Assembly: GCA_047495785.1 (NCBI GenBank)
Contig: JBLDXI010000003.1
Location: 2,480,001 to 2,544,000 of the forward strand
Source of the DNA: Lepidodermella squamata
Taxonomy: Eukaryota; Animalia; Gastrotricha
Reading direction: 5' to 3'
DNA length: 64,000 nucleotides
The position numbers and the translations under genes were made by a program. Positions 426 through 25,900 of this stretch are shown here, piece by piece. The notes under the pieces are model-generated. The model was given only the letters and a program-made list of their open reading frames with translations. It ran no database searches and was not told where the DNA came from. Numbering within the stretch: the stretch's first letter is position 1; every line of letters begins with the position of its first letter.

Positions 426-1096
426 TTAGTTGGAGGTGCTGACCGACTTGCTGTACGAGTACGAGCCCTTGCTGGCCTTGCGACCGCCGAAGTTGTGGCC
501 CCACTTGTTTCCAAAGTTGTGACCGTACTTGTTGCCGAAATTATGGCCGTACTTGTTTCCGAACTTGTGACCCCATTTGTTGCCGAAATTGTGGCCGTAG
601 TTGTTGCCAAAGTTGTGGCCCCACTTGCCGACCTTCTTGCCGTGGTTCTTGCCATAACGGCGAGCACCGAATCGGTTGTTGCGCTTGCCATGACGAGCAC
701 CCGAGGACGAGGCGGACCTCGAGTAGGAGCCGCCGAAACGTTTGTTCTTGCCGAAACGGTTGCCCGAGAAGGAGGCGGACTTGGAGTACGAAACAGAGAC
801 TGACTTGGAGTAGGATCCGCGGCGCTTGTTCATCTTGCGGTTGTTCTTGCCGTGGCGCTTCTTCGGGGCGTAGACACCCTTCTTGGCGAAAGCCGCATTG
901 TTCTCGTACGATCGGCTAACCGAGAGGCTGGTCTTTTTCGAGTAACGGCGGTTCAGCTCGTTTGACTCGAATTTGTAGACCGTAGCATTGGCATGAGCTG
1001 GAAAATTGTGTAATTAATTTCATTGAACCAGATCTTAATTCTAGCCTTACCAATGCCCAACAGGACGACAGCGGCGATAGCGAGGGAGAAGCGCAT
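426..1096 (-). CDS. Secreted basic Ser/Gly/Lys/Arg-rich block protein, copy 1 (205 aa); exons 1096-1051, 997-426
   Basis: Signal-peptide exon MRFSLAIAAVVLLGI, 53-nt GT-AG phase-1 intron, in-frame exon 2 (AHANATVYKFESNELNRRYSKKTSLSVSRSYE...SYSYSKSVSTSN). Near-identical paralogs occur in the window. Confidence 0.93.
488..630 (-). repeat. 24-bp coding tandem repeat, ~6 units of [WY]GHNFGNK
   Basis: Translates as KWGHNFGNNYGHNFGNKWGHKFGNKYGHNFGNKYGHNFGNKWGHNFG. Confidence 0.9.
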
Positions 1097-1139
1097 TTTC
1101 AAATCGAATTTGTAGATGAATAAATATCAGAAGGAAATA

Positions 1140-1345
1140 TCAGCTGATGATTTCATGTATTTTGAGGGTCTGGTTTATATACCATGTTTGCAGTAATTAG
1201 CGCTTCATTAAACTTCGTGGCCAATAAGCTTCATTTGGTGTTCTAATTTTCGAACGATTGTTTATCTATACTGCTAATGAGAACACTGACCCGGAGGATT
1301 TACAGTATAAAATCTGCCGAATTCTCCCGATCAACATCATCAACA
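1140..1345. promoter_or_regulatory. Divergent core promoters of copies 1 and 2
   Basis: TATATAAA on the - strand near 1174-1181 and TATAAAA on the + strand near 1305-1311, each followed about 25 nt later by ATCATCA. The same layout occurs upstream of other family members. Confidence 0.65.
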
Positions 1346-1393
1346 GCCATTCCTTCGAATTTCAAAATAAATTGTTCTAGAAAATCTATCAAT

Positions 1394-1947
1394 ATGCGCT
1401 TCTCCCTCGCTGTCGCTGCCGTTGTTCTGTTGGGCATTGGTAAGGCGATGTCTAAGCTCTCATTCAATTTAATCATTTCACAATTTTCCTAACTAGACTA
1501 GAGATCTAAGCTCGGATTTCACTATCATTTCACAATTTTTCAGCTTATGCCAATGCTACGGTTTACAAATTCGAGTCTAACGAGTTGAACCGCCGTTACT
1601 CGAAAAAGACCAGCCTCTCGGTCAGCCGATCCTACGAGAACAATGTGGCCTTCGCCAAGAAAGGTGTTTACGCCCCGAAAAAATTCGGCCGCAAGATGAA
1701 CAAGCGCCGCGGATCCTTCTCCAAGTCGGTCTCCAAGTCGGTTTCCTACTCCAAGTCTGGCTCTTTCTCGGGTGCTCGCTATGGCAAGAACAACAAGCGA
1801 TTCGGTGGCCGCCGTTATGGAAACAAGCGTCACGGTCGCGGCCGGAAGGGCGGCAAGTTCGGAAACAAGTTCGGCTACAACTTCAACCGAAAGGGCAACA
1901 ACAAGGGCTCGTACTCGTACAGCAAGTCCGTCAGCGCCTCCAACTAA
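1394..1947 (+). CDS. Secreted basic Ser/Gly/Lys/Arg-rich block protein, copy 2 (149 aa); exons 1394-1439, 1544-1947
   Basis: 46-nt signal exon MRFSLAVAAVVLLGI, GT at 1440, CAG at 1541-1543, in-frame exon 2, AATAAA downstream. Confidence 0.93.
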
Positions 1948-3285: not shown

Positions 3286-6200
3286 GTGGTCGATAAAGCT
3301 GCCAAATCAAAAATTTTCAAATTCGAGGCTTTGGCTGAATTTGCTGAAGTCTTTAAGCCAGATTTGATTTTGATTTCCGAAACAAAAATTCCAGCTGATG
3401 CCACGCCGAAGATAGTAGAAGACTGTTTTCCTGACTATGAATGTCTTTGGATTGGGCGGGAGGATTCTGGTGGCGGAGGGGTAGCTATCTTCGTCAACAA
3501 AAGGTTGAAAGTGAAAAACCATTGGTCTTTTCGTTCAAAGCTGGAGAATTTACACGCACAGGTGGAATCTCCGAGCGGCATGGTCTCCACAGTATCAGTG
3601 ATTTATCGCTCCCCGACGGTTAAGCCTAAAATACCTGTAGAAGAGCTTGACAACGTGATGGTCGAACTCGTAGCTAAGACTAGCGAAATCGAGCATAGAA
3701 TTCTGGGCGGCGACCTAAATTGGGATCTCTTGAAACCGCAGATTGCAGAGGATCTGGAGCAAACTTTTGATTCTTTCAAAATGACTCATAGTTTTCCTCC
3801 AGCATTCACTCGGGTAGACACTCGCACTAAGAAAGGCACGATGATCGATCACTTCTGGTCAACTGCTACAGCTCAAGAAATCATCATCTCAGGTACAATA
3901 ATTGGTTTAAGCGACCATCATGGGATAGTTTTATCGATTAGAGACCTAGGCAAAAAACCGAAAACAACACCGAAGCCAGATATAATATCATTTCGTAATC
4001 TGCGTGAAATTAAGGCTGATCAATTTCAATATGAGCTTCAAAAGGCCCTAGGAGATTCCGGACTTCAACGAGACGAGGATCAACAAGGATACTGCGACAG
4101 GATCCAAGGTGCTTTCATTACTGTGCTCAACAAACTAGCTCCATTAAGAACAAAAAAGATCTCGAAAAATAAGCGAAAAAAGTTGCACTCAACATTTATT
4201 TCCCAAGAAAAGCAACGGTCAGACCGCAGGAAAGTCAGGAAATCTCGTCGCGCCAAGTGGAGACAAAAGGTGAAATTAGCTGGAAAAGACCCACGAAAAT
4301 TATGGAAGATTGTAAATGAATTTCGGCCCAAAAAGAAAACGGGGGAAAATGATTTTTCTGGACTTGAAAAAATCAGGCTATTACCTTAGCCAATGCCTTC
4401 AACAGTCTTTTCGCCAATGTTGGAAAAAACATTGCCATTGCAATGCTACAACGCCTAAATTTTCACCGTGCATTCCAGACCACGGAAAAGTTCAATTTTC
4501 GCGCAATCACGACAAGGGAACTGCTGGATGCATTGGCTAAGGTAAAGAATAAACCCACAACTGGTATAGATGAAATACCTGAGTCAGTTTTGAAAATGAG
4601 TACCAGCGTTGTTGCTCCGCATTTACTTGCTTTATTCAATGAAATAATTCGATCGAAAACAATTCCCGAGCAATGGAAAACGGCAATTGTGCATCCTTTG
4701 CACAAAGGAGGATCTAAAGATGACGTGTCGAATTTCAGGCCAATTTCAATTCTATCGCCAATATCTAGGACGTTTGAGAGGTGCATCTCGTTCCAAATTA
4801 AATCGCATTTAAATAAGCCGGAAACAAGGTTCTTGTCGCCTACACAGTTTGGGTTCCGCAAATTCCATTCAACAGACAGCTGCCTTGCAAAACTCACCGA
4901 AGACTGGCACATTTCGCACGAAAAAAGGGAAACAGTCGCAGCAGTAGCTATTGACTTGAGCAAGGCCTTTGACTCGCTACATCATGAAGGCATCTATAGG
5001 TCCTTGGCTAGTGCAGGATTTGAACTGGAAGCTATTCAGTTGATCGAAAACTATCTCAGTGATCGTTACCAGTATGTAGAAATTAACCAAAGTCGCTCAA
5101 GTAAAGCTAAGGTGGAATTCGGCGTACCACAGGGCAGTGTCCTAGGGCCATTGCTATTTACCATCTACGTAAATGAAATGGCTTCGATTCCAATATATTC
5201 GAAAATAGCTCAATTCGCAGATGACACCACTATTTACTTGTCAGATAAAGACGTTGAACGCCTTCAGGATCGCCTTCAATCCGACATCAACCGGTTGAGT
5301 GACTGGTTAGCAGCAAATAGCTTACTAGTCAATGGAAAAAAGTCGCAGATGATAATCATAGCCACTGATCCCGATGCACCTCCCCCAGAAATCTCCATCA
5401 AAATCGAAAATACGAGAGTTGAAATCACCACATCGCTCAAAGTCCTGGGCTATATTATTGACAACAAACTATTGCACACTGAACAGCTCAAACATGTGGG
5501 TAACAAAACCAGGGGTGGTCTCTTTGCTCTAAAATTTGCGGCTAAATTCCTTGATCGAAAAACCCTCAAATTGATGGCTAATGGTGTCATCTTCTGTCAC
5601 CTAATGTACTGTGACAGCGTCCTAGCCCAAGCGGCAAAAACTAACTTAGAGCGCCTTCAACGACGACAGGACAAAGCCGTTCGCATAATTTGTCATGCGA
5701 ATGAAAACGATGACATCGAATCCCTGAGGAAAAAGCTAAAATGGCTAGACCTTGATGGTAAAAGGAAAGTTCATCTGGCAACCATGATATGGCGCTGCAT
5801 CAATGGCGAAGCACCGGCCGCCTTAGCCGAGTTCTTCAAACTGCAAGAGAAAACCGCTGGGGTCACAAGGAGGCAAGTCAACATAAATGCATCGAACAAC
5901 CTGCTGGTTGTCCCTCGCGTGAAGACCGATACTTCGATGCGATGCCTTCGATACCGTGGCGCCACGTTCTGGAATGGCTTGCCGAACGAAATTCGCTTAG
6001 CTACCAGCGCGGATCAATGCCGGAACCTAACTTATCATTATTTACTGTCTGAACCTACTGCAAACACTGAGGAAGGTTGTGACGTCATCGAGGCAAGCGG
6101 TGAAATTGTAAATACCGTTACTGATGATTAATTTCTAATTCCTTGTTGAGTCTAAATACGATATTTTTATACTGGTATGCATGTCATTGTCTTTTTCCTA

Positions 6201-7719: not shown

Positions 7720-8086
7720 AATGTTCCTGGCATCATAGACCCATCGTGGCACATGGCACTTTTTAGCGACTTTCTGTCAACTGTGAATCAATACAGCATC
7801 GTAGAATCCTCTGTTGACAGATCTTGTAAAAGCGAAAAAGAGAAAGTTTTTCGCTTTCCTAAGCGATACAACACATCTGGCGCGCGTTGGCTATATTAAA
7901 AAGCCTTACCTACAACGCGATACTTCTCTACTACCAACACAGCATTACTACCTTGCCGCTCCGTGCTGTGGACGAAAATCAATTTTATAGCCTGTCTCTG
8001 CCGTCCTGCAATAAAAAGAGGATTCACACTTATTGATGCGGCTTTGCATTTTTCACTCGCTAACGATCGGCCCCACATGACGAAGC

Positions 8087-10411
8087 ATGGTTGAAATATT
8101 TAGCCCTGCTTCCAACGCTGGGTTTAAAATTTTCTTCGCAATCGGCGCCATTTTCACGTGTTTCATTCTCTACATCGTAATAACAGCTATTCACAGCTCG
8201 GGAATTGGCGCTCAAAATTACGGCAATTTTTTCCTCGACGCATTGAAACCGAAAACTTACCATTCACGCTTGATTGACCGCATATATCCTCCTACAACTA
8301 AACCGCCAGTAAAATCTCGCCACGTATTCCACGAAAAACTTGATTTATTCATCGAAGAAAAGCTATGCAACATCGATTGGATAATGACTGGTGGATCGAC
8401 TTGCAGCTTCGAACGCCGACATCTACCTCCTTTCGCAGTCACTCTACCGGAAAAAGCGAGACATACATTCGAGACAATGCGAAATAGTGTGATACTAGTT
8501 GTCGTTTTTAATTGGGACACAAATTATTTTGTCTCACCCTTGGTGCACGCACTCTACGCTAAGAATTTCGCCGCAGTTCGGTATTGCGGTCTTCGGCCGA
8601 ATGCGACGCATTTCCGGCAGCAAATTGAGCTGTATTTCCCACGCGATATTGCCGCTGAATTCGAGCCGCTCTACCTCAACTTTTTAGCCGCTGATCAGAA
8701 GGAAATTCGAGTGGGTGGCGGCGAGACGATGTACTACTGCGCTAACCTAGCGATGGAATCGATTTCTAAAACTATCGATGTCAACGGTGTATTCCTGATA
8801 CATGACGATGCGTTGCTGAGCCACTGGCTGGCTGGTTTCAGGCCTGATTTGTTGAATCTGGAGAAGAGTTATTTCTACGGTATCGGCGAGCCGTTTGATT
8901 TAACTATAATGAAGCTGTGCCGTCCGGCGAAACCTGAGATGAACGAGACTGAATCACCGTGTGATGGCTTACCTATCACCTGGTGGCCGGCGACCCTGTA
9001 TCACGATGTCTCTGTTAAATTTTACAAGGTTCGTTTTTACCTTATCTATACCGGATTTTCTCGGTTCGTATAGGCCAGTAAATCTTGAATTGAAGCTTTG
9101 AGAATTATGGAGAAGATATAATTTTAGGAATAGCGTGGCGCATACTTGAGTAACGCAACAAAGAAATTCCTCAGAAAAGGAGAATGACTCTAGAATGAGT
9201 GACAAAAACAGATATTATGGCCAAACAACACAGTCAAGAGAAAATTAAAAAATTCTACAAAAAATTGCCAGTTAACTTTCTTAACTAAGGACTCTGATGA
9301 GTCTCTTGGCCGAGACGAAACGTATACATCAGACTAGCCATAATGATTCTACAAAAAAGTATGTCACTTAAATATGGTAATAAAAAAATCCGGAAATATT
9401 GGTCCAACCGGGTACATTACTAATAATTACCATCGGAGCTTACCGGGTTTATCGGGTGGATTACGAATTTTCTCCGTTGAATTTTTATTCTGGTGCATTT
9501 AATTTAAAAATGATTTTTCACATAACAATTTAATTAAAACTTTTCAATGGCAGCGCAATGTTTGGGACACTGTGGATAAACAAATTTCCGCTTTGAGAAA
9601 TTTTAATTCACAAATTTGAATTAGTTACCGCTCACAGTTAATTGGGATATAGTGAATTCATTACCAAATTTTTGAATCCTGTTCCAAATTAGTTTTAACG
9701 GCACTTAAAAATCCAATCAGTTCCAAGTCCCCAATTTTAAGACCTAACCCTAACCCTAACAAATTACATAACCGAATAAAATGGCCAAGTACTGAAAAAA
9801 TGGAACTGGTACCGCAGTAAGATTTTCAACAGTTAATTTGGTGCGACTGGAAAAGAGCTGTGCTAACTTATGTACCAAGCTCTACATTTGATAGAAGTCA
9901 CATTCGAATATTTAATTTTATACGAATTTTTCTTCAGGAATGGACAGAATTAGCCGAAAATTCTACTTCTGATTCTTCGTTTAAATTTTGCCTTGATCGC
10001 CTCGCTGATCGAACTCACGGCTACAACCGGATAGTCGGCGGGTTAGCAGACGGTTTCTACCTCACTAAGCCACATTTCAACCTGATTTCATCGATTCTCA
10101 AGCTGGCTCATAACCACAGCGTATTTCAGGAGCTGATAGTTCCTACGACTTTCGCTTGCATACCACCTAATGAGACAGGCCTGTTTAACGTCGACAAAAA
10201 TCAAGCGGCGAGAGGAACTCGTGATCCGCCCTGGAACATATTCGACTCAAACGAACTGCTGATGCATCCGTTTAAATTCAGCGGATTTCTGAAAGCGATG
10301 ACCGGTGATAAAAAAGCCTTGGGTGATAACACGCGCGAGTTGTGTCTCTACTGTATGCTGGCTCAATACAGCAAATTGCTGGCACTGCTAACTAGAAAAA
10401 AATCAGATTAG
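8087..10411 (+). CDS. STELLO/DUF288-like type II membrane protein (putative glycosyltransferase-like), copy 1; exons 8087-9028, 9938-10411
   Basis: N-terminal TM anchor; motifs VILVVVFNW, LY..NF...RYCG, GVFLIHDDALL, HPFKFS; phase-0 splice FYK|EWT; tandem paralog with the same structure. Family assignment is by motif recall. Confidence 0.7.
9130..9573. mobile_element. Degenerate Tc1/mariner-like MITE in intron, homologous to 55722-56113
   Basis: Shared blocks AGTAACGCAA, TTGGTCCAACCGGGTA and TACCATCGG in inverted orientation relative to the 55.7-56.1 kb copy; ends resemble a GTGTCCCA TIR. Confidence 0.55.
9265..9345 (+). mobile_element. 81-bp insert with hammerhead ribozyme core, flanked by a 13-bp direct repeat
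   Basis: CTGATGA-GTCTC-ttggcc-GAGAC-GAAAC at 9294-9321; ATTCTACAAAAAA at 9252-9264 and 9346-9358. Confidence 0.65.
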
Positions 10412-11131
10412 AATTATTTCTTCAAATAAAATTCAAATTGGCAACAATTAATAATGAAAGATGAGACTCATCAAAATTTGAAATCAAGCAAGTGATCTCT
10501 TATATGTAAAATTACGAACTTCGGCACGCGACCAAGGGCTTGGTACTAAACATGAAGCATACCTAGCCACAAGAATAGCCCTAATTATAGCCCAAAGAGA
10601 CTACTATTAGAATTAGAGTCCCAAGCCAAAGGGAGCTGGTAACAAATGCTGGTGGTGAAAAAGTGGCTATAAGGTTTGAAAATTCAAACTTGTCCACTTG
10701 ACCTGGATGATTCATGCAGAAACTAGGTCATTAGCAAATCCGACCGGCGTCGACGTTATCGCGACAGCGGAGAACGTGATTATGGAGGCTGGGACCCCAG
10801 AAGCATGAGAATACGCCGCACTGCCTGTCTGAAATTACAATGCACCCCGAGAACATTTTAACCTAGAACGCAATACTGGCTCATATGGTGTCTGTGCAAT
10901 CACGCTCTCCTTTTTTTACATAGTACGATATAACATACTCATATCTTGAAAAGAGGAAAATTATCGCTTTTCTAAGTGACACCTTCGCATGTCGGCTCTA
11001 TTTATAAAAGTCCATGTAGCCGCTCACGGACGTACCGCTCACGTGCTGGGGTCAAAGTCTCCGTCTCGCCCTGCAATAAAAAACAGATTCAAATTTCTTA
11101 GTGTGGCTTAGCATTTTCCACTCACTGACGC

Positions 11132-13189
11132 ATGACGAAGACTGTTGGCATATTTAGCCCTGCTTCCAACGCTGGCTTTAAAATTGTCTTCGCTATCGGC
11201 GCCATTTTCACAACTTCCTTTCTTTACATCGCAATATCAGCTTTTCACAGCTCAGGAATTGGCGCTCAAAACTACGGCAATTTTTTCCTCGAGCCAAACC
11301 ATTCACGCTTGATTGGCCGCATATACCCTCCTAAAACCAAGCCGCTAGTAAAATCTCGGCACGTATTCAACGATAAACTTGATTTATTCATCGAAGAAAA
11401 TCTATGCGATATCGATTGGATTTTGAGCAGCGGATCCACTTGCCGCTTCGAACGCCGCCACTTACCGCCTTTCGCGGTTGCTTTACCTGAAAGAGCGAGA
11501 ACAAGATTCGAGACTATGCGAAACGGTGTCGTATTAGTCATCGTTTTTAATTGGGAAAACAATTATTTTGTGTCGCCTTTATTACACGCACTCTACGCAA
11601 GAAACTTTGCCGCAGTTCGGTATTGCGGTCTTCGGCCGAATGCAACATATTTCCGGCAGCAAATTGAGCTGTATTTCCCACGCGATATTGCTGCTGAATT
11701 CGAGACGCTCTACCTCAATTATCTAGCAGCAGACCAACAGGAAATTCGAGAGAACGTCGGCGAGGCTATTTACTACTGCGCTAACCTTGCGATGGAATCA
11801 GTTTCAAATGCTATCGATGTAACCGGTGTTTTCTTGATACATGACGATGCGTTGCTGAGCCACTGGCTGGCTGGTTTCCGCCCTGATTTGTTGGATCTGG
11901 AGAAAAGTTATTTTTACGCAGGCGGTGAGCCGTTTGATCTAACCACAATGAAGTATTGCCGCCCGGCGAAACCTGAGATGAATGAAACGGAATCACCTTG
12001 TGATGGCTTACCTGTCGACTGGTGGCCGGCGAACATGTACCAAGACGTCGCTGTTAAATTTTACAAGGTTCGTTTTTACCAAGTTTGATTAATCTGGAAT
12101 GCACGCTGATTTCAACATGGGTCCTATGACTATGGGACTTGGATTTGTAGATTCTAAAATCCAAGGTCATAGGACTTACACCTGAGAAGCAGTTAAGCCG
12201 CTAATTTTCGGGTCCACCTGAACAAATGAACCTTATATGGGAGAATGCAGCAAAATGCCATGTTATTATTGCTAAAACCTTATTTTTTGCCACCACAAGA
12301 ATCGTATTTTTGCCTCGATCAGATGAATTTTGTATGTGTTTGTTAAGAATTGTCGAGTCCATACTGACATTAGTTCCAAGTCAATTGCCGCGACCGAAAA
12401 TTATTAACTTTTCGCTAAGCGGTTAAGATATAGCGATAATCTAGAGTTAGTATTGCTTGGTATACTAAACCAATTTAAACGAGCATTTTGATCAACCTTG
12501 AAAAAAAATTCTTTCCGGCTAATAATCAGCAGCGTCCAAATACAGAGAATTCGCGATGCCCGCGATCGCCAGCGAATTTTCAAAATTAAATTCTTTTCTA
12601 GTAACAGCGCTGAGCTGATGCGTTGCAAATGGCCGTGTTTCGAGAGTTTAAAGCATAGGTTTCGTTTTTCTCATTATTTTATCATCGAAGTTTTCATGAG
12701 GAATGTTTTTATAAGGAATGGACAGATTTGGCTGAAAATTCGACAACTGATTCTTCGTTCAAAGTATGCCTTGATCGCCTTGCTGATCGAACTCTCGGCT
12801 ACAACCGAATAGTTGGCGCGTTGGCTGATGGATTTTACCTCACTCGGCAGCATTTTAACATGATTTCGCCGATTCTCAAGCTGGCTCATAATTACAGCGT
12901 ATTTCAGGAGTTGACAGTCCCAACGTCTTTCGCCTGTATACCACCCGACGAGACCGGCCATTTTAACGTTGATAAAAATCAAGCGGCGAGGGCAAATCGA
13001 GACCCGGCTTGGGACATATTTGACTCAAACGAGTTGCTTATGCATCCGTTCAAATTCAGTGGGTTTCTTAAGGCGATGACCGGTGATAAGGAAGCCCATG
13101 GTGAAAACACGAGCGAGCTGTGTCTCTACTGCATGCTAGCTCAATACAGCAAATTGCTGGCACTGCAAACTAGAAGACAATCTGATTAG
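11132..13189 (+). CDS. STELLO/DUF288-like type II membrane protein, copy 2; exons 11132-12067, 12716-13189
   Basis: High similarity to copy 1 and the same splice junction FYK|EWT. Confidence 0.7.
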
Positions 13190-13953: not shown

Positions 13954-14642
13954 ATGCGCCTGACTCTTATCGCAGCCGCTGTCGCTCTTTTCTGCATCGG
14001 TAAATTAATGACTTTTACAAGAATGAAATCACTGTTTTTCTGTGCATAGTTGCCACTTCAGCTGATGAGGCTTCAGCCTCGGATAACAAGAATGAAGCCT
14101 ATGCTTCTGCCGGCGGTGACGAGAAGGCTCAACGTGGTAATAAATTGATCGGTCGCAATCACGGCCGTGGATTCGGTTACATCGGGCAACAACGTGGTGG
14201 TGACAACTTTGCCTCGGCTTCAGTCAACAAGAAATCCGCCTCAGCTGGCAACAGCAACAAAGGCCGCAAGAAGTTCGGTCACCGTCGCCTCCGCCGTCGG
14301 GGACAAAACTTCGCCTCAGCTGCTTCCGGCAACGCGCGCGGCTACGGCAAGTTCTTCGGCCGTCGGCACGGTGGTCGTCGCTTTGCCTCTGATAACACGC
14401 GATCTGTCTCTGCTGCCGTCGGCAACTACCGCGATCGTCGTGGCTACGGATTCGGTGATCGTCGTCGAGCCGGTGACTTCGCCTCGGCTGCTGCCGGCAA
14501 CTTCCGAGGCCGCCGTGGTCACTTCGGCGGCCGTCATGGCCATCGTCTTACCGGCGACTTCGTCAACAAGGACGCCGCCTCCGCCTCGGCTGGCAATAAC
14601 AAGCGCGGTGGACTTGCGTGGCGATGGGACTATGGGCGTTAG
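13954..14642 (+). CDS. Secreted basic Gly/Arg/Ala/Ser block protein (212 aa); exons 13954-13999, 14050-14642
   Basis: 46-nt signal exon MRLTLIAAAVALFCI, 50-nt phase-1 intron, exon 2 in frame with ORF 14145-14642; repeated FASAxxGN blocks alternating with GRR/GH-rich blocks. Confidence 0.88.
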
Positions 14643-14770: not shown

Positions 14771-15399
14771 CGTGTTTTTCTTGCTGTTCTCCTGCTTGTC
14801 GCTATTGGTAATTTCCTTGGTGCCGATAAGGGTTGCAACAACAAGGACTCGTTCTCTGGCTCAGTTGCTCAACACGACTCCTACGCTCTGCTGAGCAAGA
14901 ATTCGGTGCCTTCGACTTCGCCTCGGCCGATGCTTCTCACAACAAGAAGACCAGCGACAAGCGCAAGCTGATCAAGACCCGATCGGCCAGCCATGAACGC
15001 GCCTCGGCCAGCTACGCCTCGGCAGGGAAGCGCGACTCCGCCTACGACCGCAAGAAGTCCAAGGCTGGCAGCAAGCGCCACGGCCGCAAAATCCGCGAAA
15101 GCGACTCGGCTGCCTTCGCCAAGCACGACAACGCCTACGCCGACTCTGGCGCCGCCGCCGCTGCCCAGAAACACAGCCGCAACAAGAAGCACGGCCGGGC
15201 TGACCACAAGCGCAAGGCTGGTTTCCAGAAGGACCAGGCCCGCGATAAGGCCGGCGAGGTGATCGAGTTCAAGAAGAAGACCTTTACCGACAAGAGCCAC
15301 AACAAGGAGATCAAATCAGTGTTGCCAATGGAACTCCTCTTTACGGTACCCCATACTGAGAAGGGTCTAATTATTTTTGGGTACGAAATAATAATATAA
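14771..15399 (+). pseudogene. Pseudogene of a secreted Lys/Arg/His/Ala/Ser-rich protein
   Basis: Signal-like RVFLAVLLLVAIG followed by GT but lacking ATG (aaaa-cgt), no normal-length intron, 1-nt frameshift near 14887 (YA|SAEQE), low-complexity body ASA/KKHGR. Confidence 0.65.
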
Positions 15400-15624
15400 T
15401 ATTCATCATTCTTCATTTATAAATTTGTGATTTCATTTAATTTCTGTTTTTGAAACCACAATAATCTTAATGCCGCCCAACAACGTAGGAGCCCCTCAAA
15501 TGCGATTTCCAGCTGCGAAATAAAATCAAAATAATTGGCACACACAATTATTGCAATATAGACCACGCAATTAGGAGACCGAGAGCCATGGTATAAAAGC
15601 CGCGAGAATTTAGTTCAAAATCAT

Positions 15625-18600
15625 CATAGAGAATAGAGTTACCAGAGATGAAACTCCTATTGGAAACTTGAAGTTTTAATTCTTTTGCCGATTTTCGTAA
15701 ATTTTCATTATGGCGGATCTTTTTCAAACTCGCGCATACATGTTTACATGTAAAACAAGGGTGTTTTTCCACGCGCTATACCCAAAATAGCTCATCATGG
15801 AATTCCGATTTTTTTATTCTAATCGATGGGGATTGGTTTCAACTATAAACAGTCCAAAGGATATCGTACGGAAATGAACGGTTTTGACGCCATAGCGATT
15901 TCCCCGAAGGTCACTTTTTTGGGTGTTCAAAAATGGGTGTTTTTGCCTTGACCCCACGGCCACATCCTTGACCGGATTATAAGTTTCTTGGGTTTAAATG
16001 ATAGAAATAACCCATATTATAAAAGTTCAGAAGAAACTGAAACTGTAGATGGTGTCGTTTAAAAACTATTCAGGTTTTTCTGCGACGTTTTTTTCGCGAT
16101 GCAGTATATATTTTCAACGCAGAATTATTATTATTCAATCTAAATAATACGTGGCACTATGATCCGCTCGGTTCAAATTCCAATTAATCTCCCATTACCC
16201 TCCCAATGAAACTGAAGAGTCGCATTTAAACAGAAAACTGTATAATATTTATTCAATAAATGAAGTAAAAAAATAGCTGATGTCGTCACTATTCGCCTCG
16301 GAACTGGCTTGCTTTGCGAGCTGCAGTTGACGTTTGCTGCGACGGATAGGTTTGCTTCACAAACCAGCGAATGAAGATTCTCGCAACAGATTGCGCTAAT
16401 TCGTTTAACAACTCAGGATTATGATCTCCACAGAAATGGGTGTCGACCAGGTTATCACTGCAAGACTGCAGAATCAAAAGAGTGGCGATTTGAGCGGGTT
16501 TTTGGCGGTGGATGAACTTGTGTCGTTGCAACTTTAGTTCGCGATAGGCTGCCAGCACAAATTTGTATAGCCGACTCGAGGGAAATTGGAGGTGCATTGA
16601 TGATGCCCCGTAATTTTTGGCGACGATAACCTCCTTTGGAATGTCACTGCCGTCGCCAATCAAGGATGCCACACATTTAAGGCATTTAATTAACGAGCTG
16701 ATCGTGATGGCGCGGAAAGCAACAAAACCAGCAAGATAAGCGATGATTGCATTACCCACATTTTCGACGAATGGCGACGTAGCGATAGCTGACTGATCCG
16801 GTGCTTGCGTTCTTTCCGCAACTTCTTCAACCATCCTATCCAGCTCATCTTGCGACAAGTCCTCCTTTGATGATCCCTTCGACTTCTTATGCTCTTCTGC
16901 CAGTTCAAAAACAGACAACACGTTTTTGCGAGCCGCGGATTTCACGCTTCTTCCTCTGAGCTTCGTGACCTTCTGGACGAAATTGGATTTCAAACCAGCC
17001 AATACCTGGTTCATAGTGGGGTTTCGACCGCCTCCGCCAGAATATCGAAGAAAGCAGAATAGAAGCTCCAGCATATCCTGGAGAAAATAATAGGTGCAAA
17101 TGAAATCGAATTCTCTTTTCGCCAACAGATTTTCGACGATTCCGATTATCGATTTCGTCGCAACGATGTAGCCGAGAAAGCCCGCTTTCATGCTGCAGCT
17201 GACCGCAAGTTCTGTTTTGGTGATCATCGCGTTATGTTTCTTGCTGAATTTAGTCCTCGTTATCGTCATCGTTTCCAGCATTTTCACGGTTTTCAAGAGG
17301 GTTGACCGCCATTCACACAGATTTTCTCTGGTGACTGCTTTCCGAAATGGTGCACCATCCCCTTGAACAGATCGTGAATTGAGGCAATCGTTCGAATCAT
17401 TCATTGTCTGAAGAAAGTACTGCGTTCCTTTGGAATCTTTCAGCTTCGCATTTCCAAGTGCCGCAAGAGCTTTCATTCCGTTGACAAGCCGAGTTCCAAA
17501 TACCTGCTGCGCCAGGCTCACGTCCATCGGAGCCTTGTCTGGGGCAACAAGATGTCGACGGTTGACAGGGCATCCAAGATGAAGACCGACAGCTTCCTGC
17601 ACTTCCACCACTTCTTCTACATGAGAGGCGTACGCGCGCATTTTTGATCCATCATCAGCCTCGAATTCGAGGTAATCGGCTCGAAGGAACCAGTTCCGAA
17701 TGAGTTTTATGTCGTGGCTAGGATCGGGAATCCAGTAGAGAGGCGTTGTTAGAACTAGATCGTCGATTCTGTCCACGAACATTCTTCCATCAGGAGTGGT
17801 TCCCAGACCGAGGTATTTCGCAAGCTTCGTATTCGCTCGAAAAGAATCCGTAATGAAGGCGTGTATTTCAATACCTACTTCCATGGAGCAGATAATAATT
17901 TCCTTCAAGAAAGCAAGTTGAATCAGGTGATCAGGGGCAACCAAGTATAGACTCGCCGCCGGTAGGCAAAGTGTCGCGTCGAGCGAAGCAACTTGGAAAA
18001 CAACGACTTCCTCGGCTGCTTTGGTCAGCTGCGGTATGACTGAAGGGTGGTCTTTGAACTTATCACCAACAGTACAAATTCCCTCCAATTGGTCAGCGGA
18101 TGGCAGGTAATTTCCACAAACCTTTGTCGACATTCCGTCGATTTGGCACACGCAATGCCTCGAACGAGCTATCATCTGGGCGTATTTTTTCAATGCGATA
18201 AACGTTATCGATATCATTCCCGGTTTCACAGGGACATCAAGAAGCCAATTGTAGACTGTTTTCCTGCATGGAACAGCGTCGCCAAATAGTTCTCGAAGAA
18301 TGTTTAAAGCTCCTTGACTAGTTAAAGCCATGCCCACAAAAAATTCCTTCGACTCCAGGCGATAACGATGCCCCTGTGGTCCAGCGCACATCGCATTCTT
18401 CGCCGCATTCAAAATAATTGGTTTTGCTTTGGATGGCAGTGAGTCGAGTGGACAATCGGGAACAGCGTAAGATGGACTTGATAGCAGCCTAGTCACGTCC
18501 TGCCTCGCTAATTTCAACTTCTGCTTCACTTGATCAATGGTGTCACTTGGGCGGCCGCGTTTTTTCGGAATCAGAGGTGTGGCTGAAACTACTTGCTCGA

Positions 18601-19901
18601 CGATTGAAGGGGGTGGTGGCAGGATTGGCGAGACATTTTCTTCACGTTGACATGCTTGAATAGGCTGGATGGTCGCAAGCGGCAAATGCTCAGAAGTGTT
18701 AGCTGGCGCTTTCCGTAACATGTTGGCAGTCGTTATAGATTCCAAAACCAAGGTTTCATCCAGTTCAAGCTCGACGTCGAATGCCTGCTGAAGGAGCTCA
18801 GAATGTGAGGTACCGCCCGATTTCTTCAACTTATCACGGAACCAAAATGCTTTTCTGTGAACCACCATCAGGTTTTCATTGCTATGGCGAACGGGAAAAG
18901 GGTCGCAAAATTTATCGAGGAGAGCGGGTAAATCTGGCTTTGACGTTTGGCGATACTCGCGAAGGTTGTAACCTGTCAGGCAAAACTTTCGTATCATCCT
19001 GCATGGGCTAAAAAAAATTTCAGACGTGAAATCTGTAACAGAAACTTGTTTTCTTACCAAGAAATGATTAATAAATCCGGAATCCGAATATAAAATCGGT
19101 TAATGAATTTTTTTGCGATGTTTCACTCCTTTGTGGAATATTATGCTGGATGTTTTGAAAAAATACGATGATTCAGCAAAGCTCAAGATTCTTATCAGCC
19201 TCCTGGATTAATACGCATTAGGGTTATCATAGGAAATATTAATTCAGCAACGAAAAACAAACTGCTGGAATTTTAGAATATTGGGAATATTATCTAAGGT
19301 CATCTTCGAATCTATTGTCGGCTTGATCGTATAACTTTGATCGATATTTAAATTAAACATAGGAAAATACTAGACGATTTTGTTTGTCAAATATATAATA
19401 ATTCTGCGTTGAAAATATATACTGCATCGCGAAAAAAACGTCGCAGAAAAACCTGAATAGTTTTTAAACGACACCATCTACAGTTTCAGTTTCTTCTGAA
19501 CTTTTATAATATGGGTTATTTCTATCATTTAAACCCAAGAAACTTATAATCCGGTCAAGGATGTGGCCGTGGGGTCAAGGCAAAAACACCCATTTTTGAA
19601 CACCCAAAAAAGTGACCTTCGGGGAAATCGCTATGGCGTCAAAACCGTTCATTTCCGTACGATATCCTTTGGACTGTTTATAGTTGAAACCAATCCCCAT
19701 CGATTAGAATAAAAAAATCGGAATTCCATGATGAGCTATTTTGGGTATAGCGCGTGGAAAAACACCCTTGTTTTACATGTAAACATGTATGCGCGAGTTT
19801 GAAAAAGATCCGCCATAATGAAAATTTACGAAAATCGGCAAAAGAATTAAAACTTCAAGTTTCCAATAGGAGTTTCATCTCTGGTAACTCTATTCTCTAT
19901 G
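15625..19901 (-). mobile_element. P-superfamily DNA transposon with 507-bp TIRs (Galileo-like architecture), 4277 bp
   Basis: TIRs 15625-16131 and 19395-19901 begin CATAGAG and appear identical by eye; 8-bp TSD AAAATCAT at 15617-15624 and 19902-19909. Confidence 0.95.
16289..19060 (-). CDS. P-element/THAP9-family transposase (true 5' end uncertain, possible upstream exon)
   Basis: Motifs CVCQIDGM, FITD, DPSHDIKLIRN, QDMLELLF..LR..GG...NP, YLAGFV; AT-hook-like KKRGRP; uninterrupted 923-codon ORF. Confidence 0.9.
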   Translation of the reverse strand: MVRKQVSVTDFTSEIFFSPCRMIRKFCLTGYNLREYRQTSKPDLPALLDKFCDPFPVRHSNENLMVVHRKAFWFRDKLKKSGGTSHSELLQQAFDVELELDETLVLESITTANMLRKAPANTSEHLPLATIQPIQACQREENVSPILPPPPSIVEQVVSATPLIPKKRGRPSDTIDQVKQKLKLARQDVTRLLSSPSYAVPDCPLDSLPSKAKPIILNAAKNAMCAGPQGHRYRLESKEFFVGMALTSQGALNILRELFGDAVPCRKTVYNWLLDVPVKPGMISITFIALKKYAQMIARSRHCVCQIDGMSTKVCGNYLPSADQLEGICTVGDKFKDHPSVIPQLTKAAEEVVVFQVASLDATLCLPAASLYLVAPDHLIQLAFLKEIIICSMEVGIEIHAFITDSFRANTKLAKYLGLGTTPDGRMFVDRIDDLVLTTPLYWIPDPSHDIKLIRNWFLRADYLEFEADDGSKMRAYASHVEEVVEVQEAVGLHLGCPVNRRHLVAPDKAPMDVSLAQQVFGTRLVNGMKALAALGNAKLKDSKGTQYFLQTMNDSNDCLNSRSVQGDGAPFRKAVTRENLCEWRSTLLKTVKMLETMTITRTKFSKKHNAMITKTELAVSCSMKAGFLGYIVATKSIIGIVENLLAKREFDFICTYYFLQDMLELLFCFLRYSGGGGRNPTMNQVLAGLKSNFVQKVTKLRGRSVKSAARKNVLSVFELAEEHKKSKGSSKEDLSQDELDRMVEEVAERTQAPDQSAIATSPFVENVGNAIIAYLAGFVAFRAITISSLIKCLKCVASLIGDGSDIPKEVIVAKNYGASSMHLQFPSSRLYKFVLAAYRELKLQRHKFIHRQKPAQIATLLILQSCSDNLVDTHFCGDHNPELLNELAQSVARIFIRWFVKQTYPSQQTSTAARKASQFRGE

Positions 19902-19972: not shown

Positions 19973-20460
19973 ATGCGTGCTTTTCTCGCTGTTGCTGTTG
20001 TCGTCCTGCTCGGCCTCGGTGAGATCTTTCGCCATATAACCATGACCCTCATAAGGATCTTTTTTCAGCTTACTCCGAGGCCAAGGTCTGGAATGTCGAG
20101 TCGAAGGAGATGCACCGCAACTACCACAAGAGCGTCACCGCCTCAGTGAGCCGCTCCTTCGAGAACAAGAAGGCTTTCCGCAAGGGACGTGCCTTCCCGA
20201 TGAAGAAGCGCCACGGCAAGAAGTTCGGCCGCAAAATGAACAAGCGCCGCGGATCCTACTCCAAGTCGGTCTCTGTTTCCTACTCCAAGTCTGGCTCTTT
20301 CTCCGGCAACCGTTTCGGCAAGAACAAGCGTTTCGGTGGCCGCAAGTTCGGCAAGCACGGCAAGAACTTCGGCTACGGCCGCAAGGGCGGCAAGTTCGGC
20401 GGTCGCAAGGCCAACAAGGGCTCTTTCTCCTTCAGCAAGTCCGTCAGCGTCTCCAACTAA
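19973..20460 (+). CDS. Secreted basic Ser/Gly/Lys/Arg-rich block protein, copy 3 (145 aa); exons 19973-20018, 20069-20460
   Basis: 46-nt signal exon MRAFLAVAVVVLLGL, 50-nt intron; shares MNKRRGSYSKSVSVSYSKS and C-terminal SFSFSKSVSVSN. Confidence 0.92.
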
Positions 20461-20573: not shown

Positions 20574-22547
20574 TTAATTTTTCCGGCTCTCAAGTTTGAT
20601 CGGAACGCCTTCGGCCGGAGCCAGGACCAGTTCTAGAGCCACAGGAATCCCATCAGCCGGATACCCACCATCAGGTTCAACCAGCCGGAATTTCCGAATC
20701 ATATTCACCAGCGTCAATTTCATTTCAAACATTGCCAATCGCATACCTTGCGAAAAAAATCCAAAAAATCTCACAAATTTAGCTAAAATAATTAGGATAT
20801 TACCGACGCAAGTTCTTGGACCAGAGCCGAAGGGCATGTAGCTCAAATCCGGGCGATCCTTCGTCGGATAATCTGGCGAAAATCGCTCTGGGTGGAAAAT
20901 GTTCGGATCAACCGGGCCCCAATACTCAGGATCTCGGAAAATCGAATAGAAATCAATCAAAATCGTCCCGAATTTCTTCGCAAAATGAATACCACCAATA
21001 TTACTGTCCTCAACAGCATGACGAGTATTAAAAGCCGCAACTGGGCAAATCCTTAGTGACTCATTTATGACCCACTCCAAGTACTGATGATTCATCAATT
21101 TATCGTAGTCAATCTCAGCTGATTCGTCCGGGAAAACTTCGATAATTTCTCGGTACAGTTTTTCCTGTTCCTTCGGATTTGCGGCTAGTAAATAGGCGAT
21201 GAAGCTTAAGGCGCTCGAAGTTGTTTCAGTTCCAGCTACTAACATGACCATACTTTGGGACAACACTTCATCCTCAGTAAATGGGACAGTCGCCATGTCA
21301 ACATTAGGGTTAAGTTCCGAGTCATCGATCAACGCTTGAAGTAGGTCATTGCGCCGTATTGATGAATCACCCGACCTCAGGTCACACACTTGTTTACACA
21401 TTGTGCGCAATTTGAACCACGGCACCATCGCCCCTGTCGTAAAAAATTTAGCCAGGGTCGATACTAGCCATTTCATCGGCCGTCTCAGTTCGGTGCAATA
21501 CATAGCGAATCGGATGAAGGCGGGTTTTTCCTGGAATAAATGCAACATTCCCATGGTGTTGTCTAACACCTGTTTACCGGACGGGTTGGAATCAGGGTCT
21601 TTAATTAGGCCGTTCAAGTCGAGGCCGAATGCCATCCCAGCTACGACGGAGATCGTCAATCGGACGAATAGCGGTTGGATATCGAATTCTCGCCCATTTT
21701 CGGCGTGTTTTGACAGCGTTTCAACGAGTTCGGCCTGGGTTTGTAGAACAAGGGGTTGGTATTGTTTCAATTTTGAAACCGTGAAAGCTGGGCTGATTTT
21801 GCTTCGAAGTCGCCGCCAGTGCTCGCCCCATGCGAAAAACACGTCGATGCCAAATACGGAATTTTTTACACCGACATCCGTTTCAGGGTCAGGCTAAAAA
21901 ACAGATAAATTAATTGCTGAAGTCTCAATATTTAAAATTAAATTAATTGGGAATTAATTTTAATATCTAATCTTTTTATTTTTTTGCTAATTTATTGTAT
22001 TATTTTGATTTATGTATATGATTAGAAAATGGGAACCGGCCAATTTTATTCGAAATTCTTGAAATTTTAAATTATTTAAATTCCAATTGAAATTTTTAAA
22101 TAATTTTAAAACAAATCTCTTTGTGAATTTTTAATTTTTCGAGTTATTCTTTATGTCTCTCTTGGTAATTACGAGCTGGCATGAAGATTTATGTCCCTAA
22201 AATGCAATCAGTACCTGAAAAGGTCCAATATTATGACCTTGGAATGACCAGTACTGCTTGATCGTAACCTGTTCAGCTAATTCTGGGGCTGCTACAACCA
22301 ATACCGGCCGGCCACCCTCGTAATAGCCCCACATTTTGCCGTACTTTTTCGTCCACTCAACCATGCGTAACGCCCGGCGGTTCTCCGGGCCAAACATCTC
22401 ATGCGTATTACCGCAGAACCAGTGCGGTTCCGGGCCCGGAATACCGAGCCGAGCGAAAAATCGGTGCCGGTAGAATTTTCGGTAAAAGTAGAACGCAACC
22501 AGTGATGTTGGGGCCAGGGCTAACAGCCACACGGCCACTGATACCAT
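20574..22547 (-). CDS. Cytochrome P450, clan 3-like; exons 22547-22215, 21893-20804, 20746-20574
   Basis: N-terminal anchor + PGP, WRRLR, AGTETT, ESLR, PERF, and heme motif FGSGPRTCVG|MRLA after removing a 57-nt intron. Confidence 0.95.
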
Positions 22548-22927
22548 TTTTCTGTAAATTACTTATTATACCTTCAAAAAAGCCTGCATGCTGATAAAAA
22601 ACCCACAAGAACTCAAAAAACGTTATCAAAAATGTAATGAATAGTATTATATGCACGAGCGCTTTAAACGTGAAAAAAACCAATTAACGTGCTGAATTTT
22701 TAAAGTTGAGCTGTTTATGTGTAATTGAAACACGCATATACAGAAATAGCCTAAATATTATGAATTTCGGCTATTTAAAAAAAATCAAATCAATTTTCTT
22801 GGTGTGTCTCAATTTCTCAAATTTTGAAAAAAGTCGAAACACTGAGGTACACCAAACATTTTATTCAAAAATTGATGATCGGCGAAAGAATAAAATTAAT
22901 AATAAAACAGGCGGAATTCAAATTTGT

Positions 22928-25900
22928 TTAATGGCGCCAATCAACGTTATCGATGTCAATTCGATTCGGATCGAGCGTTGTAGATACAGCCGAATCGATC
23001 ATTTCACCACTGTTTCGCTTCGATTTCAACGCTGCTTTGAGGAAATCAGCAATCGCCCGGCGTTCAGGCTTCAAAGACGCGAGAGAAATCGCGCTAAAGC
23101 CATCACTGTTGACCAGCAGCAAATCCGCACCGCGTTCAATTAGCAATTTAACAACTTCGAAGCGGTCACGGATGACTGCGCGAATTAGGGCTGTGTCACC
23201 CTGTTGCGGCAGGCCACTTTGCGCATCAATTGCGACGCCATTGTCGAGAAAAAACCGAACCGAGTTAACATTACCAGCCTCAGCCGCGATCATGAGCAGC
23301 GTTTTACCGAAAAATGTGCAGTTAACATCGGCGCCGTTTTTCAGCAGTAACTCCAGAATTCCAACACTTCGATTCGCCACAACAGCCCGGATTAAAGCCG
23401 GAGTTGCTTCGAAATTCTTTTCGCCCTTGATAAGAGTTTCAAGAACCGACCTAGCTGATTTCGGTTCAGGGTTCTTGTTACCCGAAGCTAGAGCTAATAC
23501 ATTTTCGCCGTACAAGTTAACCGGGTCGAGTTTCGCCCCCTTTTCCAGCAGCAATTTCACGATCTCGAAATGTCCCTCGATAACAGCTCGCATCAACCCG
23601 GTTTCTCGGGACAAAATATCGAATGCGTTGATATCAGCGCCGTTTTTCAGAAGAATTCGGACAGATTCGACGCAGCCTTTCGAAGCCGCGATCACCAGAG
23701 CGTGGCGGCCGAATTTCGTCCTCCAATTAGGATTCGCGCCATTCTCCAGCAATTTGTCAACAATTTTCGAGCTATTCCTGTCTAATGCGTTGAAAAATGC
23801 CGATGTTGAGACTGAGGCGCCTTTTTCTAGCAACTTTTCAACAATTTCTTCGCGGCCGTTGATCGCAGCGATTTCCAACGCTGTAGTGCCGAGTTTGCTC
23901 TTCGCATTAATTTCATCTTTATTCGGCAATTTTTCGAGGATGGCTGATATTATTTTCACCGGTGTGGATGAATCATTTACGGCGTGCATAAGAACAGTGA
24001 CGCCTTTGTTGTCGGTCGAGGTGCAGCTAGCGCCCTGGGTGATTAGAAAATCTACGACCACAGGGCAGGGTGCGTGAATTGCCGTTATCAGCGGCGTGAA
24101 ACCATGACAATTCTTCGCGTCGATGCTTGCACTGTTCTGGAGTAGAAATTTGAAGAGCTCCATGTTGCAAGTGCGAGCGGCCGTATGCAAAGGCGTATTC
24201 AAGCAGATATCGCCTTGAATAGAAATTAAGAAATTAAAAAAATAAATTATTTAAAAAAGTGAATAATTTTTGAAAATTTCTTTGCACATTTTTTTATCAA
24301 TTACTGAAATATTGCCACACAAAAAAATCAACTAATTGGGCGCTGATGCGAATCGATTTTTTTCATATTCAATTGCGCATTAGTTCGGGGTATAAAATCA
24401 GATTGAAATCGCTCACTTACCATCACCCTAAATTTTGAATTTTAAATATTTTGAATAAAACAATTTTCGCTCAAAAAATGCGCTTCTCCCTCGCTATCGC
24501 TGCCGTTGTTCTGTTGGGCATTGGTAAGGCTAGATTTATGAACTGGTTCAAAGAAATTAATTACACAATTTTCCAGCTTATGCCAATGCCACGGTCTACA
24601 AATTCGAGTCTAAAGAGCTGAACCGCCGTTACTCGAAGAAGACCAGCCTCTCAGTCAGCCGGTCCTACGAGAACAATGCGGCCTTCGCCAAGAAGGCAGT
24701 CTACGCCCCGAAAAAATTCGGCCGCAAGATGAACAAGCGCCGCGGATCCTACTCCAAGTCGGTGTCCAAGTCTGTTTCCTACTCGAGGTCTGCTTCGTAC
24801 TCGGGCAACCGTTGGGGCAAGAACAACAAGCGATTCGGAGGCCGCCGATACGGAAACAAGCGTCACGGTCGCGGCCGGAAGGGCGGCAAATTCGGCAACA
24901 AGTTCGGCTACAACTTCAACCGAAAGGGCAACAAAAAGGTCTCGTACTCGTACAGCAAGTCTGTCAGCGCCTCCAACTAAACTCAAATTTGAGCTTTCAA
25001 AGGACTCAAAATAATCTTTTGCATTGAAATTGGTTTTGAATAAATGAATGTTCGAAATGAAAATATTATTATGTTTGAATTTCACACAAAACTGGAATTC
25101 ATTTATTCAAGTGAATAATTTCTGTGCTATTTAAAATGTTTTACCAAATTGTCTTACCTTGATTAACATCGACTCCGGCATCCAGAAGCAGGTCAACAAC
25201 TTCGATAGAAGGCTCTCCCAAGTTACAGGCAGCCAACAGAACTCCGTAACCTTCTGAATTAACAGCATTCACATCAACCGAGCGATCCAACAGTAATCGA
25301 ACCATTCGAGCGTGACCATTAACAGCTGCTAAAACCAACGCATTGTTTCCCATCGCATCGGTCAAATTCACATTGGCACCGTTGTCTAGCAAATACCCGG
25401 CTATTTCAACATGGTTATTTTCAGCAGCGTGATGCAACGCGGTTTTCCCCTCAAAATCAGCCTGCCCCGAATCGGCCCGACTTTCGACTAGAGACCGCAC
25501 AATATCGATATTGCACGCGAGAACAGCTTCTTTCAGCGCAGATGAGCCGTGAAAATTCGGTAAATTTACGTCGATTTTCGTATTTTCTAGTAGCAAATAA
25601 CTAGCAATTTCGGTCCGGTTGTTGAGGACAGCTTTCAATAGCGCAGTTGAGCCGAAATCGTCTTTCGCGAGATTCACGTCGATTTTCAGGTCTTCAACTA
25701 GAAATTGGACGATTTTACTTTGACCTCGTTCGGTAGCCAGTTGAAGGGCGTAACTCGCGAGGCTTGGAAATTCTGCCTCATGGACTTGGCTGAAAATTTC
25801 CTTGATAGTGCGAGTAGCTAGATCAGAGTTCCACAACATGATTGTTTGCATTATTTGAGGGGTAATCTATGTGAAAACGAAAATCATAAAAAAAATCCAG

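What the first reader, a model, noticed from the sequence alone, without database searches (positions are those of the whole stretch)
426..24980. Family of secreted, Cys-free, hyper-basic (Ser-X)nE / Gly-Lys-Arg block proteins: candidate undescribed glue, silk or extracellular structural system
Seen: four close paralogs (426-1096, 1394-1947, 19973-20460, 24478-24980) plus divergent relatives (13954-14642, 60233-60628, pseudogene at 14771). The six intact genes have an identical 46-nt signal exon and phase-1 intron. Mature copies 1-4 have no Cys, almost no acidic residues (copy 1: three Glu, no Asp), strict Ser-X alternation (SLSVSRSYE, SYSKSVSVSYSKSASFS, SYSYSKSVSASN) and Gly/Lys/Arg/Asn/aromatic spacers. 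Known: caddisfly H-fibroin uses phosphorylated (SX)nE blocks alternating with Gly/Arg-rich blocks for Ca-dependent underwater silk, and S-x-E is the FAM20C secretory kinase motif. Inference: these are small phospho-Ser/cationic block copolymers forming an adhesive, tube, egg-coat or cuticular material, likely by convergence. Processed antimicrobial peptides are an alternative given the many dibasic sites. I recognise no named family.
Basis: partly seen in the sequence, partly recalled or inferred. Interest (0 to 1): 0.88.

Follow-up and report, generated by a model that had tools for sequence, protein, structure and literature searches.

The report
Orphan secreted serine-stripe polycationic proteins
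A tiny freshwater animal (probably the gastrotrich Lepidodermella squamata) has four related, selectively conserved genes for small, secreted, very positively charged proteins with alternating-serine stripes and no detectable relatives; they most likely help build its cuticle or eggshell, but neither expression nor function could be shown here.

Summary
Four paralogs (copies 1-4) encode 145-205 aa precursors with a 46-nt signal exon, a phase-1 GT-AG intron and a Cys-free, Asp-free mature chain (net +32 to +40, three invariant Glu). Alternating-Ser stripes far exceed chance. dN/dS is 0.11-0.27 among copies 1, 2 and 4, codon bias is strong, and TATA boxes sit at a fixed distance.

Corrections: exon 1 is identical in length, not sequence. 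Only one stripe per protein ends in Glu. Dibasic sites are not enriched. Homology of the 'divergent relatives' is unproven beyond gene layout. Copy 3 is cut off from its TATA box by a young P-type transposon.

No homolog was found in any database searched. The only sequencing run available was DNA, so splicing and expression are untested. The host is probably L. squamata (circumstantial).

Best reading: subunits of a self-assembling covering (cuticle or eggshell), with Ser-faced strands, aromatic/cationic spacers and possibly phosphate neutralisation. They resemble caddisfly H-fibroin in motif logic but are not members. This scan already noted similar families at several other loci of this genome.

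The parts
426..1096 (-). Copy 1: exon 1 1096-1051, intron 1050-998, exon 2 997-426; 205 aa, four Ser stripes plus a G-x-x-aromatic tetrapeptide array
   Evidence: tandem repeat at 486-627
1097..1393 (.). 297-bp shared upstream region of the head-to-head pair, one TATA box per direction (85 and 88 nt before each ATG) and TCATCA initiator-like motifs about 30 nt downstream of them
   Evidence: bridged without differences by one contig of run X1 (record 4)
1394..1947 (+). Copy 2: exon 1 1394-1439, intron 1440-1543, exon 2 1544-1947; 149 aa, three stripes; AATAAA 59 nt after the stop
13954..14642 (+). Gene 5: same two-exon layout, 212 aa, Gly/Arg/Ala-rich with short Ala-Ser blocks, 11 Asp; a separate sequence type, homology to copies 1-4 unproven
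14771..15399 (+). Gene 7 remnant: no start codon, signal-like piece and body in different frames, Lys/Ala/His/Asp-rich; left as it is
15592..15624 (+). Original TATA box and initiator region of copy 3, now stranded left of the transposon
15625..19901 (-). Young P-type DNA transposon (about 512-bp terminal inverted repeats, 99.8% alike; 8-bp target duplication AAAATCAT; unbroken 923-aa transposase frame) inserted at the presumed start site of copy 3
19973..20460 (+). Copy 3: exon 1 19973-20018, intron 20019-20068, exon 2 20069-20460; 145 aa, most divergent, Phe replaces many Tyr
24478..24980 (+). Copy 4: exon 1 24478-24523, intron 24524-24576, exon 2 24577-24980; 149 aa, 92% identical to copy 2; TATA 87 nt upstream
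60233..60628 (-). Gene 6: same layout, 114 aa, two complete (SX)nE motifs, 7 Glu, TATA 86 nt upstream; homology to copies 1-4 unproven

Best explanation
These are mass-produced subunits of a hard extracellular covering of a gastrotrich, either body cuticle and scales or the eggshell (about even odds). Shown: intact two-exon gene models, a signal-peptide-like N-terminus, TATA/initiator promoters, strong codon bias, purifying selection, invariant stripe serines, interchangeable aromatics, no Cys. Inferred: (1) high expression in a secretory cell; (2) Golgi phosphorylation primed at the conserved S-x-E sites and possibly spreading to the Glu-free stripes, which would neutralise the chain; (3) storage as a dense phase held by phosphate-Lys/Arg and cation-aromatic contacts; (4) after release the stripes stack as beta-strands with one all-Ser face and one Tyr/Phe/Val/Lys face, while the Gly-aromatic spacers stay flexible, giving a disulfide-free solid.
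For: Ser-majority columns are invariant in 19 of 21 cases against 34 of 65 other columns, Fisher p=0.002. Stripe Ser use mixed TCN and AGC codons, so the pattern is protein-level and not a DNA microsatellite. The one indel in the central stripe is exactly one Ser-X dyad and keeps the register. The motifs S-[YF]-S-[KR]-S and [KRN]-[FYW]-G are enriched in all four copies, p<0.001. dN/dS is 0.11-0.27 among copies 1, 2 and 4. GC3 is 0.77-0.88 against 0.49-0.59 in six neighbouring genes. TATA lies at -85 to -88 in four genes, background 1%. Net basic charge per Ser is 1.4-1.7 in genes 1-5. A divergent pair on a short shared promoter recalls silkmoth chorion genes (PMC13409908). Single X1 contigs at depth 214-817 against 39-56 for unique DNA hint at further copies (the tool warns depth is no copy number). 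Chaetonotids have an ornamented cuticle and only two adhesive tubes (PMC4563153).
Against: No RNA run was available, and run X1 retains introns and intergenic DNA, so splicing and expression are untested here. AlphaFold gave no confident fold and no beta-strands (mean pLDDT 47 and 55). There is no localisation, phosphorylation or material data. A strict FAM20C rule leaves the proteins at +22 to +30. Host identity is circumstantial. Nothing tested separates cuticle from eggshell or glue.
Confidence: 0.55

Rival explanations
1. Components of the glue of the caudal adhesive tubes, or an egg-attachment cement: polycationic cohesive proteins that work like the Lys/Arg regions of flatworm ap1 or like tubeworm cement proteins.
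For: Extreme positive charge and cation-aromatic motifs. Flatworm cohesion depends on Lys/Arg-rich regions (PMC6410801). Tubeworm cement uses 216-234 aa secreted proteins, phosphoserine and coacervation (PMC12621633). Gastrotrichs are reported as sister to flatworms.
Against: Flatworm adhesives are 5,407 and 14,794 aa multidomain, Cys-containing proteins; none of those domains occurs here. An unchecked scan note (s1-368357) offers a giant polycationic protein as a better ap1 analogue. Two small adhesive tubes are a modest output for so many genes (inference).
Confidence: 0.17
2. Cationic Gly/aromatic antimicrobial or surface-defence proteins, acting whole or as fragments on bacterial membranes.
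For: Small, secreted, Cys-free, net +32 to +40, with Gly-aromatic repeats like Gly-rich invertebrate antimicrobial peptides (own knowledge); clustered and TATA-driven.
Against: Dibasic sites are not above chance and there is no furin-type site in copies 1-4. Selection is purifying rather than diversifying. The most conserved feature is the Ser stripe, which antimicrobial action does not need.
Confidence: 0.13
3. Phosphate- and nitrogen-rich storage or granule-matrix proteins (phosvitin-like yolk components, or a reproductive-gland secretion) with no load-bearing role.
For: The Ser/Lys/Arg balance would give a neutral, densely packable chain if fully phosphorylated. FAM20C phosphorylates Glu-free serine stretches of phosvitin (PMC7948968).
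Against: Phosvitin has contiguous Ser runs inside vitellogenin, not strict alternation. Register-keeping indels and conserved aromatic positions suggest ordered assembly.
Confidence: 0.1
4. Not functional genes, or copies created by whole-genome-amplification chimeras.
For: No RNA evidence here. The probable source assembly was made from amplified DNA (PMC11660948).
Against: Copies differ by dS 0.28-0.53 and by in-frame indels, with dN/dS well below 1, and have canonical introns, TATA boxes and (copies 2-4) AATAAA signals.
Confidence: 0.03

Closest known systems
Caddisfly H-fibroin (Trichoptera; PMC10387566)
   Same: Alternating Ser-X blocks with hydrophobic, aromatic or Arg X residues, separated by Gly-rich basic spacers; one conserved (SX)4E per protein.
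   Different: 14-21 kDa against 200-500 kDa; no conserved fibroin termini, no C-terminal Cys; most stripes lack the Glu; no sequence homology.
Sabellariid tubeworm cement proteins Pc/Sa-1, 2, 3 (PMC12621633)
   Same: Small secreted low-complexity proteins; basic Gly/aromatic chemistry; a possible phosphoserine and coacervate route.
   Different: There the basic and the phosphoserine-rich chains are separate proteins; here both block types sit in one chain. Tyr is freely replaced by Phe here. No homology.
Flatworm adhesive protein ap1 (PMC6410801)
   Same: Secreted, extremely Lys/Arg-rich; related phylum.
   Different: ap1 is 5,407 aa with lectin, vWD and EGF domains and a Cys-rich core; these proteins are 145-205 aa, domain-less and Cys-free.
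Silkmoth chorion multigene family (PMC13409908)
   Same: Clustered short structural-type genes, a divergent pair on a short shared promoter.
   Different: The pair here joins two members of one family rather than A and B types; no chorion Pfam match; polycationic and Cys-free.
Trematode vitelline eggshell proteins (PMC11727788)
   Same: Small Gly/Lys/Tyr-containing secreted proteins of a related phylum.
   Different: No TES domain; only 2 of 17 aromatic columns are invariant Tyr and 9 mix Tyr with Phe or Trp, which argues against DOPA tanning as the main cross-link.

Membership tests
Caddisfly H-fibroin | 200-500 kDa chain with a long repetitive core | tested here: not met
   Mature mass 14-21 kDa; definition
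Caddisfly H-fibroin | Conserved N- and C-terminal domains with a C-terminal Cys | tested here: not met
   No Cys in mature chains; no Pfam or sequence hit
Caddisfly H-fibroin | Repeated (SX)nE motifs, n=3-5 | tested here: inconclusive
   One per protein in copies 1-4, two in gene 6; the other stripes lack Glu
Caddisfly H-fibroin | Gly-rich spacers between Ser blocks | tested here: met
   Gly 11-15% of the chain, sited mostly between the stripes
Caddisfly H-fibroin | Phosphorylated serines bridged by Ca2+ | not testable with these tools
   Only charge arithmetic was possible
Flatworm ap1 cohesive protein | Giant protein with C-type lectin, vWD/C8/TIL and EGF domains | tested here: not met
   145-205 aa, no Pfam domain; definition
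Flatworm ap1 cohesive protein | Lys/Arg-rich, extremely basic regions | tested here: met
   Lys+Arg 24-29%, pI 11.1-11.9
Flatworm ap1 cohesive protein | Expression in adhesive gland cells | not testable with these tools
   No RNA run
Trematode vitelline eggshell proteins | TES domain | tested here: not met
   No Pfam hit at E up to 1; definition
Trematode vitelline eggshell proteins | Conserved Tyr as DOPA precursor | tested here: not met
   2 of 17 aromatic columns are invariant Tyr; 9 mix Tyr with Phe or Trp
Silkmoth chorion A/B proteins | Sequence match to chorion families | tested here: not met
   No Pfam hit
Silkmoth chorion A/B proteins | Divergent gene pair on a short bidirectional promoter | tested here: met
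   Copies 1 and 2, 297 bp apart with two TATA boxes; layout only
Processed Gly-rich antimicrobial precursors | Repeats flanked by enriched dibasic or furin cleavage sites | tested here: not met
   12-13 dibasic sites against 9-11 +/- 2.3 expected; no R-x-K/R-R in copies 1-4
Processed Gly-rich antimicrobial precursors | Antimicrobial activity | not testable with these tools
   Needs an assay

The most novel reading that the evidence does not exclude
Gastrotrichs build their cuticle or eggshell from an independently evolved, megabase-scale gene complex of miniature one-chain polyampholytes. In these, a secretory kinase converts alternating-serine stripes into phospho-strands whose charge is matched by built-in Lys/Arg spacers, so the material sets in soft fresh water with little need for metal ions, disulfides or DOPA.
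Probability: 0.2. Interest if true: 0.8.

Novelty: new variant of a known kind. Interest (0 to 1): 0.52.

Why it matters
My searches of the paper library found no structural, eggshell or adhesive protein described for any gastrotrich. This family gives probes that make the question 'what is the gastrotrich covering made of' directly testable. It would also be an independent arrival at the alternating-serine plus basic Gly-spacer design known from caddisfly silk, in a 15-kDa Cys-free chain that is easy to express recombinantly.

Tried and rejected
Homolog searches, all blank or compositional only: Pfam (one sub-threshold prion-octapeptide hit on the copy 1 repeat); 5.8-billion protein set with copy 2 exon 2 and with alignment A1; 1.84-billion representatives with copy 1 exon 2, 35 hits that all centre on the tetrapeptide array, and the 20 inspected are unrelated and lack the stripe motif; ESM Atlas; PDB sequences; JGI metagenomes by protein pattern and by a DNA pattern that finds all four copies locally. 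These blanks are limited by query-length windows, low complexity and poor sampling of the lineage.

AlphaFold models were low-confidence, so no fold search was run; the long helix predicted over the Gly-rich array is judged an artefact. Exact look-up of eight neighbouring ORFs found nothing. The bacterial promoter scan is not applicable and was ignored.

Rejected or weakened: amplification-palindrome artefact for the head-to-head pair; DNA-repeat origin of the stripes; DOPA tanning as the main cross-link; a multi-peptide precursor.

Joined models were only translated locally and never sent to a search or fold. Signal peptides were judged by eye, as no predictor is available.
Full report
Observation. 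Reading the sequence and modelling genes confirms four close paralogs and two further intact genes at the stated coordinates. Each has a 46-nt first exon encoding Met-Arg plus 13 mostly hydrophobic residues, a phase-1 GT-AG intron of 50-104 nt, and one second exon. A small-residue cleavage-like site follows the splice (by eye). A blind scan for hydrophobic first exons in the window returned these six and one unrelated hit. Exon 1 is equal in length but only 24-45 of 46 nt identical. Mature copies 1-4 have no Cys, no Asp and three Glu, a net charge of +32 to +40, and 15-19 S-x-S dyads where shuffles give about 3.

Family limits. Copies 1-4 are clear homologs (68-92% identity to copy 2; z 25-51). 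Genes 5, 6 and the remnant at 14771 share layout and basic composition, but their second exons align to copies 1-4 only marginally, mostly near the reversed-sequence control, and no better than codon shuffles at DNA level. They are best treated as other sequence types of a wider class. Gene 6 has two complete (SX)nE motifs. Gene 5 has no (SX)n run and 11 Asp. The remnant lacks a start codon and has pieces in different frames; it was read as it stands.

The genes are functional by every sequence test. dN/dS is 0.11-0.27 among copies 1, 2 and 4 and 0.45-0.69 against copy 3. GC3 is 0.77-0.88 against 0.49-0.59 for six neighbours, with near-exclusive use of AAG, AAC, TTC and TAC, which suggests heavy translation (inference). 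Four genes have a TATA box 85-88 nt before the ATG (background 1%), most followed about 30 nt later by a TCATCA initiator-like motif. Copies 1 and 2 are head-to-head over 297 bp with one TATA box each way. Copy 3 is a special case: a P-type transposon (15625-19901; inverted repeats 99.8% alike; 8-bp target duplication; 923-aa frame with three TNP-like Pfam domains) lies between its TATA box at 15592 and its ATG, inserted at the initiator. Copy 3 may therefore be silent. Before the insertion, genes 5, 7 and copy 3 were direct neighbours.

Expression was not testable. The run search returned one run and no RNA holder. That run keeps both introns and the intergenic DNA, so it is genomic, and it may be the source of the assembly. 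It bridges the two first exons without differences. Single contigs over the coding regions reach depth 214-817 against 39-56 on unique flanks, a hint of further near-identical copies; the tool warns that depth is not copy number.

Host. Two scan notes suggested a gastrotrich (s1-410332, s1-421969). My partial check: window GC is 42.9% and the published Lepidodermella squamata assembly has 43% GC, 122 Mb, 157 contigs and 83x coverage (PMC11660948). The scan index lists 1,992 windows on 147 pieces at a 62-kb step, about 123 Mb, and unique contig depth near 40-55 is about half of 83x. This is circumstantial; no marker gene was compared.

What selection keeps. Ser-majority columns are invariant in 19 of 21 cases against 34 of 65 for other columns (p=0.002). 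The stripe Ser use mixed codons. The only indel in the central stripe adds one Ser-Lys dyad and keeps the register. The alternate face carries Tyr, Phe, Val, Lys, Arg and Ala. Spacers are enriched in [KRN]-[FYW]-G. Aromatic columns swap Tyr, Phe and Trp freely: 9 of 17 are mixed and only 2 are invariant Tyr, so ring stacking or cation-aromatic contact matters more than tyrosine chemistry. All three Glu are invariant and two lie in S-x-E. A strict FAM20C ladder marks only 4-5 Ser and leaves +22 to +30, whereas phosphorylating every Ser at about -1.5 gives -2 to +4 in all four copies. Net basic charge per Ser is 1.4-1.7 in genes 1-5. This may be coincidence, but FAM20C is reported to phosphorylate Glu-free serine stretches (PMC7948968; PMC12621633). 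Dibasic sites are not enriched.

Relatives. None were found. The 35 hits centre on the copy 1 tetrapeptide array, and the 20 inspected are unrelated proteins. Structure prediction was uninformative. A neighbouring transporter does find 44-56% identical relatives in two ENA metagenomes, so related animals are sparsely present in the databases, yet no homolog of the family surfaced there.

Mechanism. I put 0.55 on subunits of a hard covering, cuticle or eggshell, assembled through Ser-faced strands and cation-aromatic spacers, probably with phosphate neutralisation. Rivals are glue (0.17), antimicrobial (0.13), storage or granule matrix (0.10) and artefact (0.03). Gene integrity, selection and motif logic are shown. 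Secretion, expression, phosphorylation, assembly and tissue are inferred.

Comparison. The proteins work like miniature caddisfly H-fibroin modules but fail membership on size, termini and Cys, and only partly meet the (SX)nE criterion (PMC10387566). They also fail membership of flatworm ap1, trematode vitelline proteins and chorion families, although the divergent-pair layout resembles chorion genes.

Earlier notes. The scan has recorded similar polycationic or serine-stripe genes many times in this genome: an overlapping six-gene cluster running into this window's start (s1-407780), clusters 0.37-0.98 Mb further along the same piece (s1-407477, s1-407585, s1-430931, s1-421489, s1-379572, s1-379661) and others elsewhere (s1-374138, s1-410332). 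Some report spliced, abundant transcripts for their own genes. I did not verify these and use them only as leads for a large gene complex.

Verdict. This is a real, undescribed orphan family, a new variant of secreted block-copolymer structural proteins, with function untested. Interest 0.52.

Noticed in passing
window 15625-19901: Apparently intact, very young P-type DNA transposon with long (about 512 bp) terminal inverted repeats, inserted exactly at the initiator of copy 3.
   Followed up: yes
window 8002-13212: Tandem pair of STELLO-like glycosyltransferase genes (about 83% alike) lying between copy 2 and gene 5; any link to the secreted proteins is untested.
   Followed up: partly
window 3286-6131: LINE-type retroelement with endonuclease and reverse transcriptase frames.
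   Followed up: partly
window 20574-22547 and 22928-25851: A cytochrome P450 gene ends about 110 nt after copy 3 on the opposite strand, and two ankyrin-repeat frames flank copy 4 on the opposite strand.
   Followed up: partly
window 1440-1543: The copy 2 intron is doubled by an internal duplication (104 nt against 50-53 nt in the others); run X1 also shows a shorter variant from another allele or paralog.
   Followed up: partly
window 37632-39935: Long 767-aa frame for a class C GPCR-like receptor with an ANF_receptor ligand-binding region.
   Followed up: partly
window 52660-58836: Multi-exon ankyrin-rich gene that looks like a TRPN (NompC)-type channel by eye; the one piece scanned had no Pfam hit.
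   Followed up: no
window 33502-34863: Degraded piggyBac-like transposase pieces, judged by eye from the ORF list.
   Followed up: no
window 43581-49624: Large multi-exon gene with discoidin-like, laminin-G/pentraxin-like and fucolectin-like stretches, judged by eye.
   Followed up: no
L001-L004 (ENA ERZ23486764, ERZ27332993): Metagenome contigs with 45-56% identical homologs of the transporter at window 61349-62629, probably from a related small animal; a possible source for cross-species comparison.
   Followed up: partly
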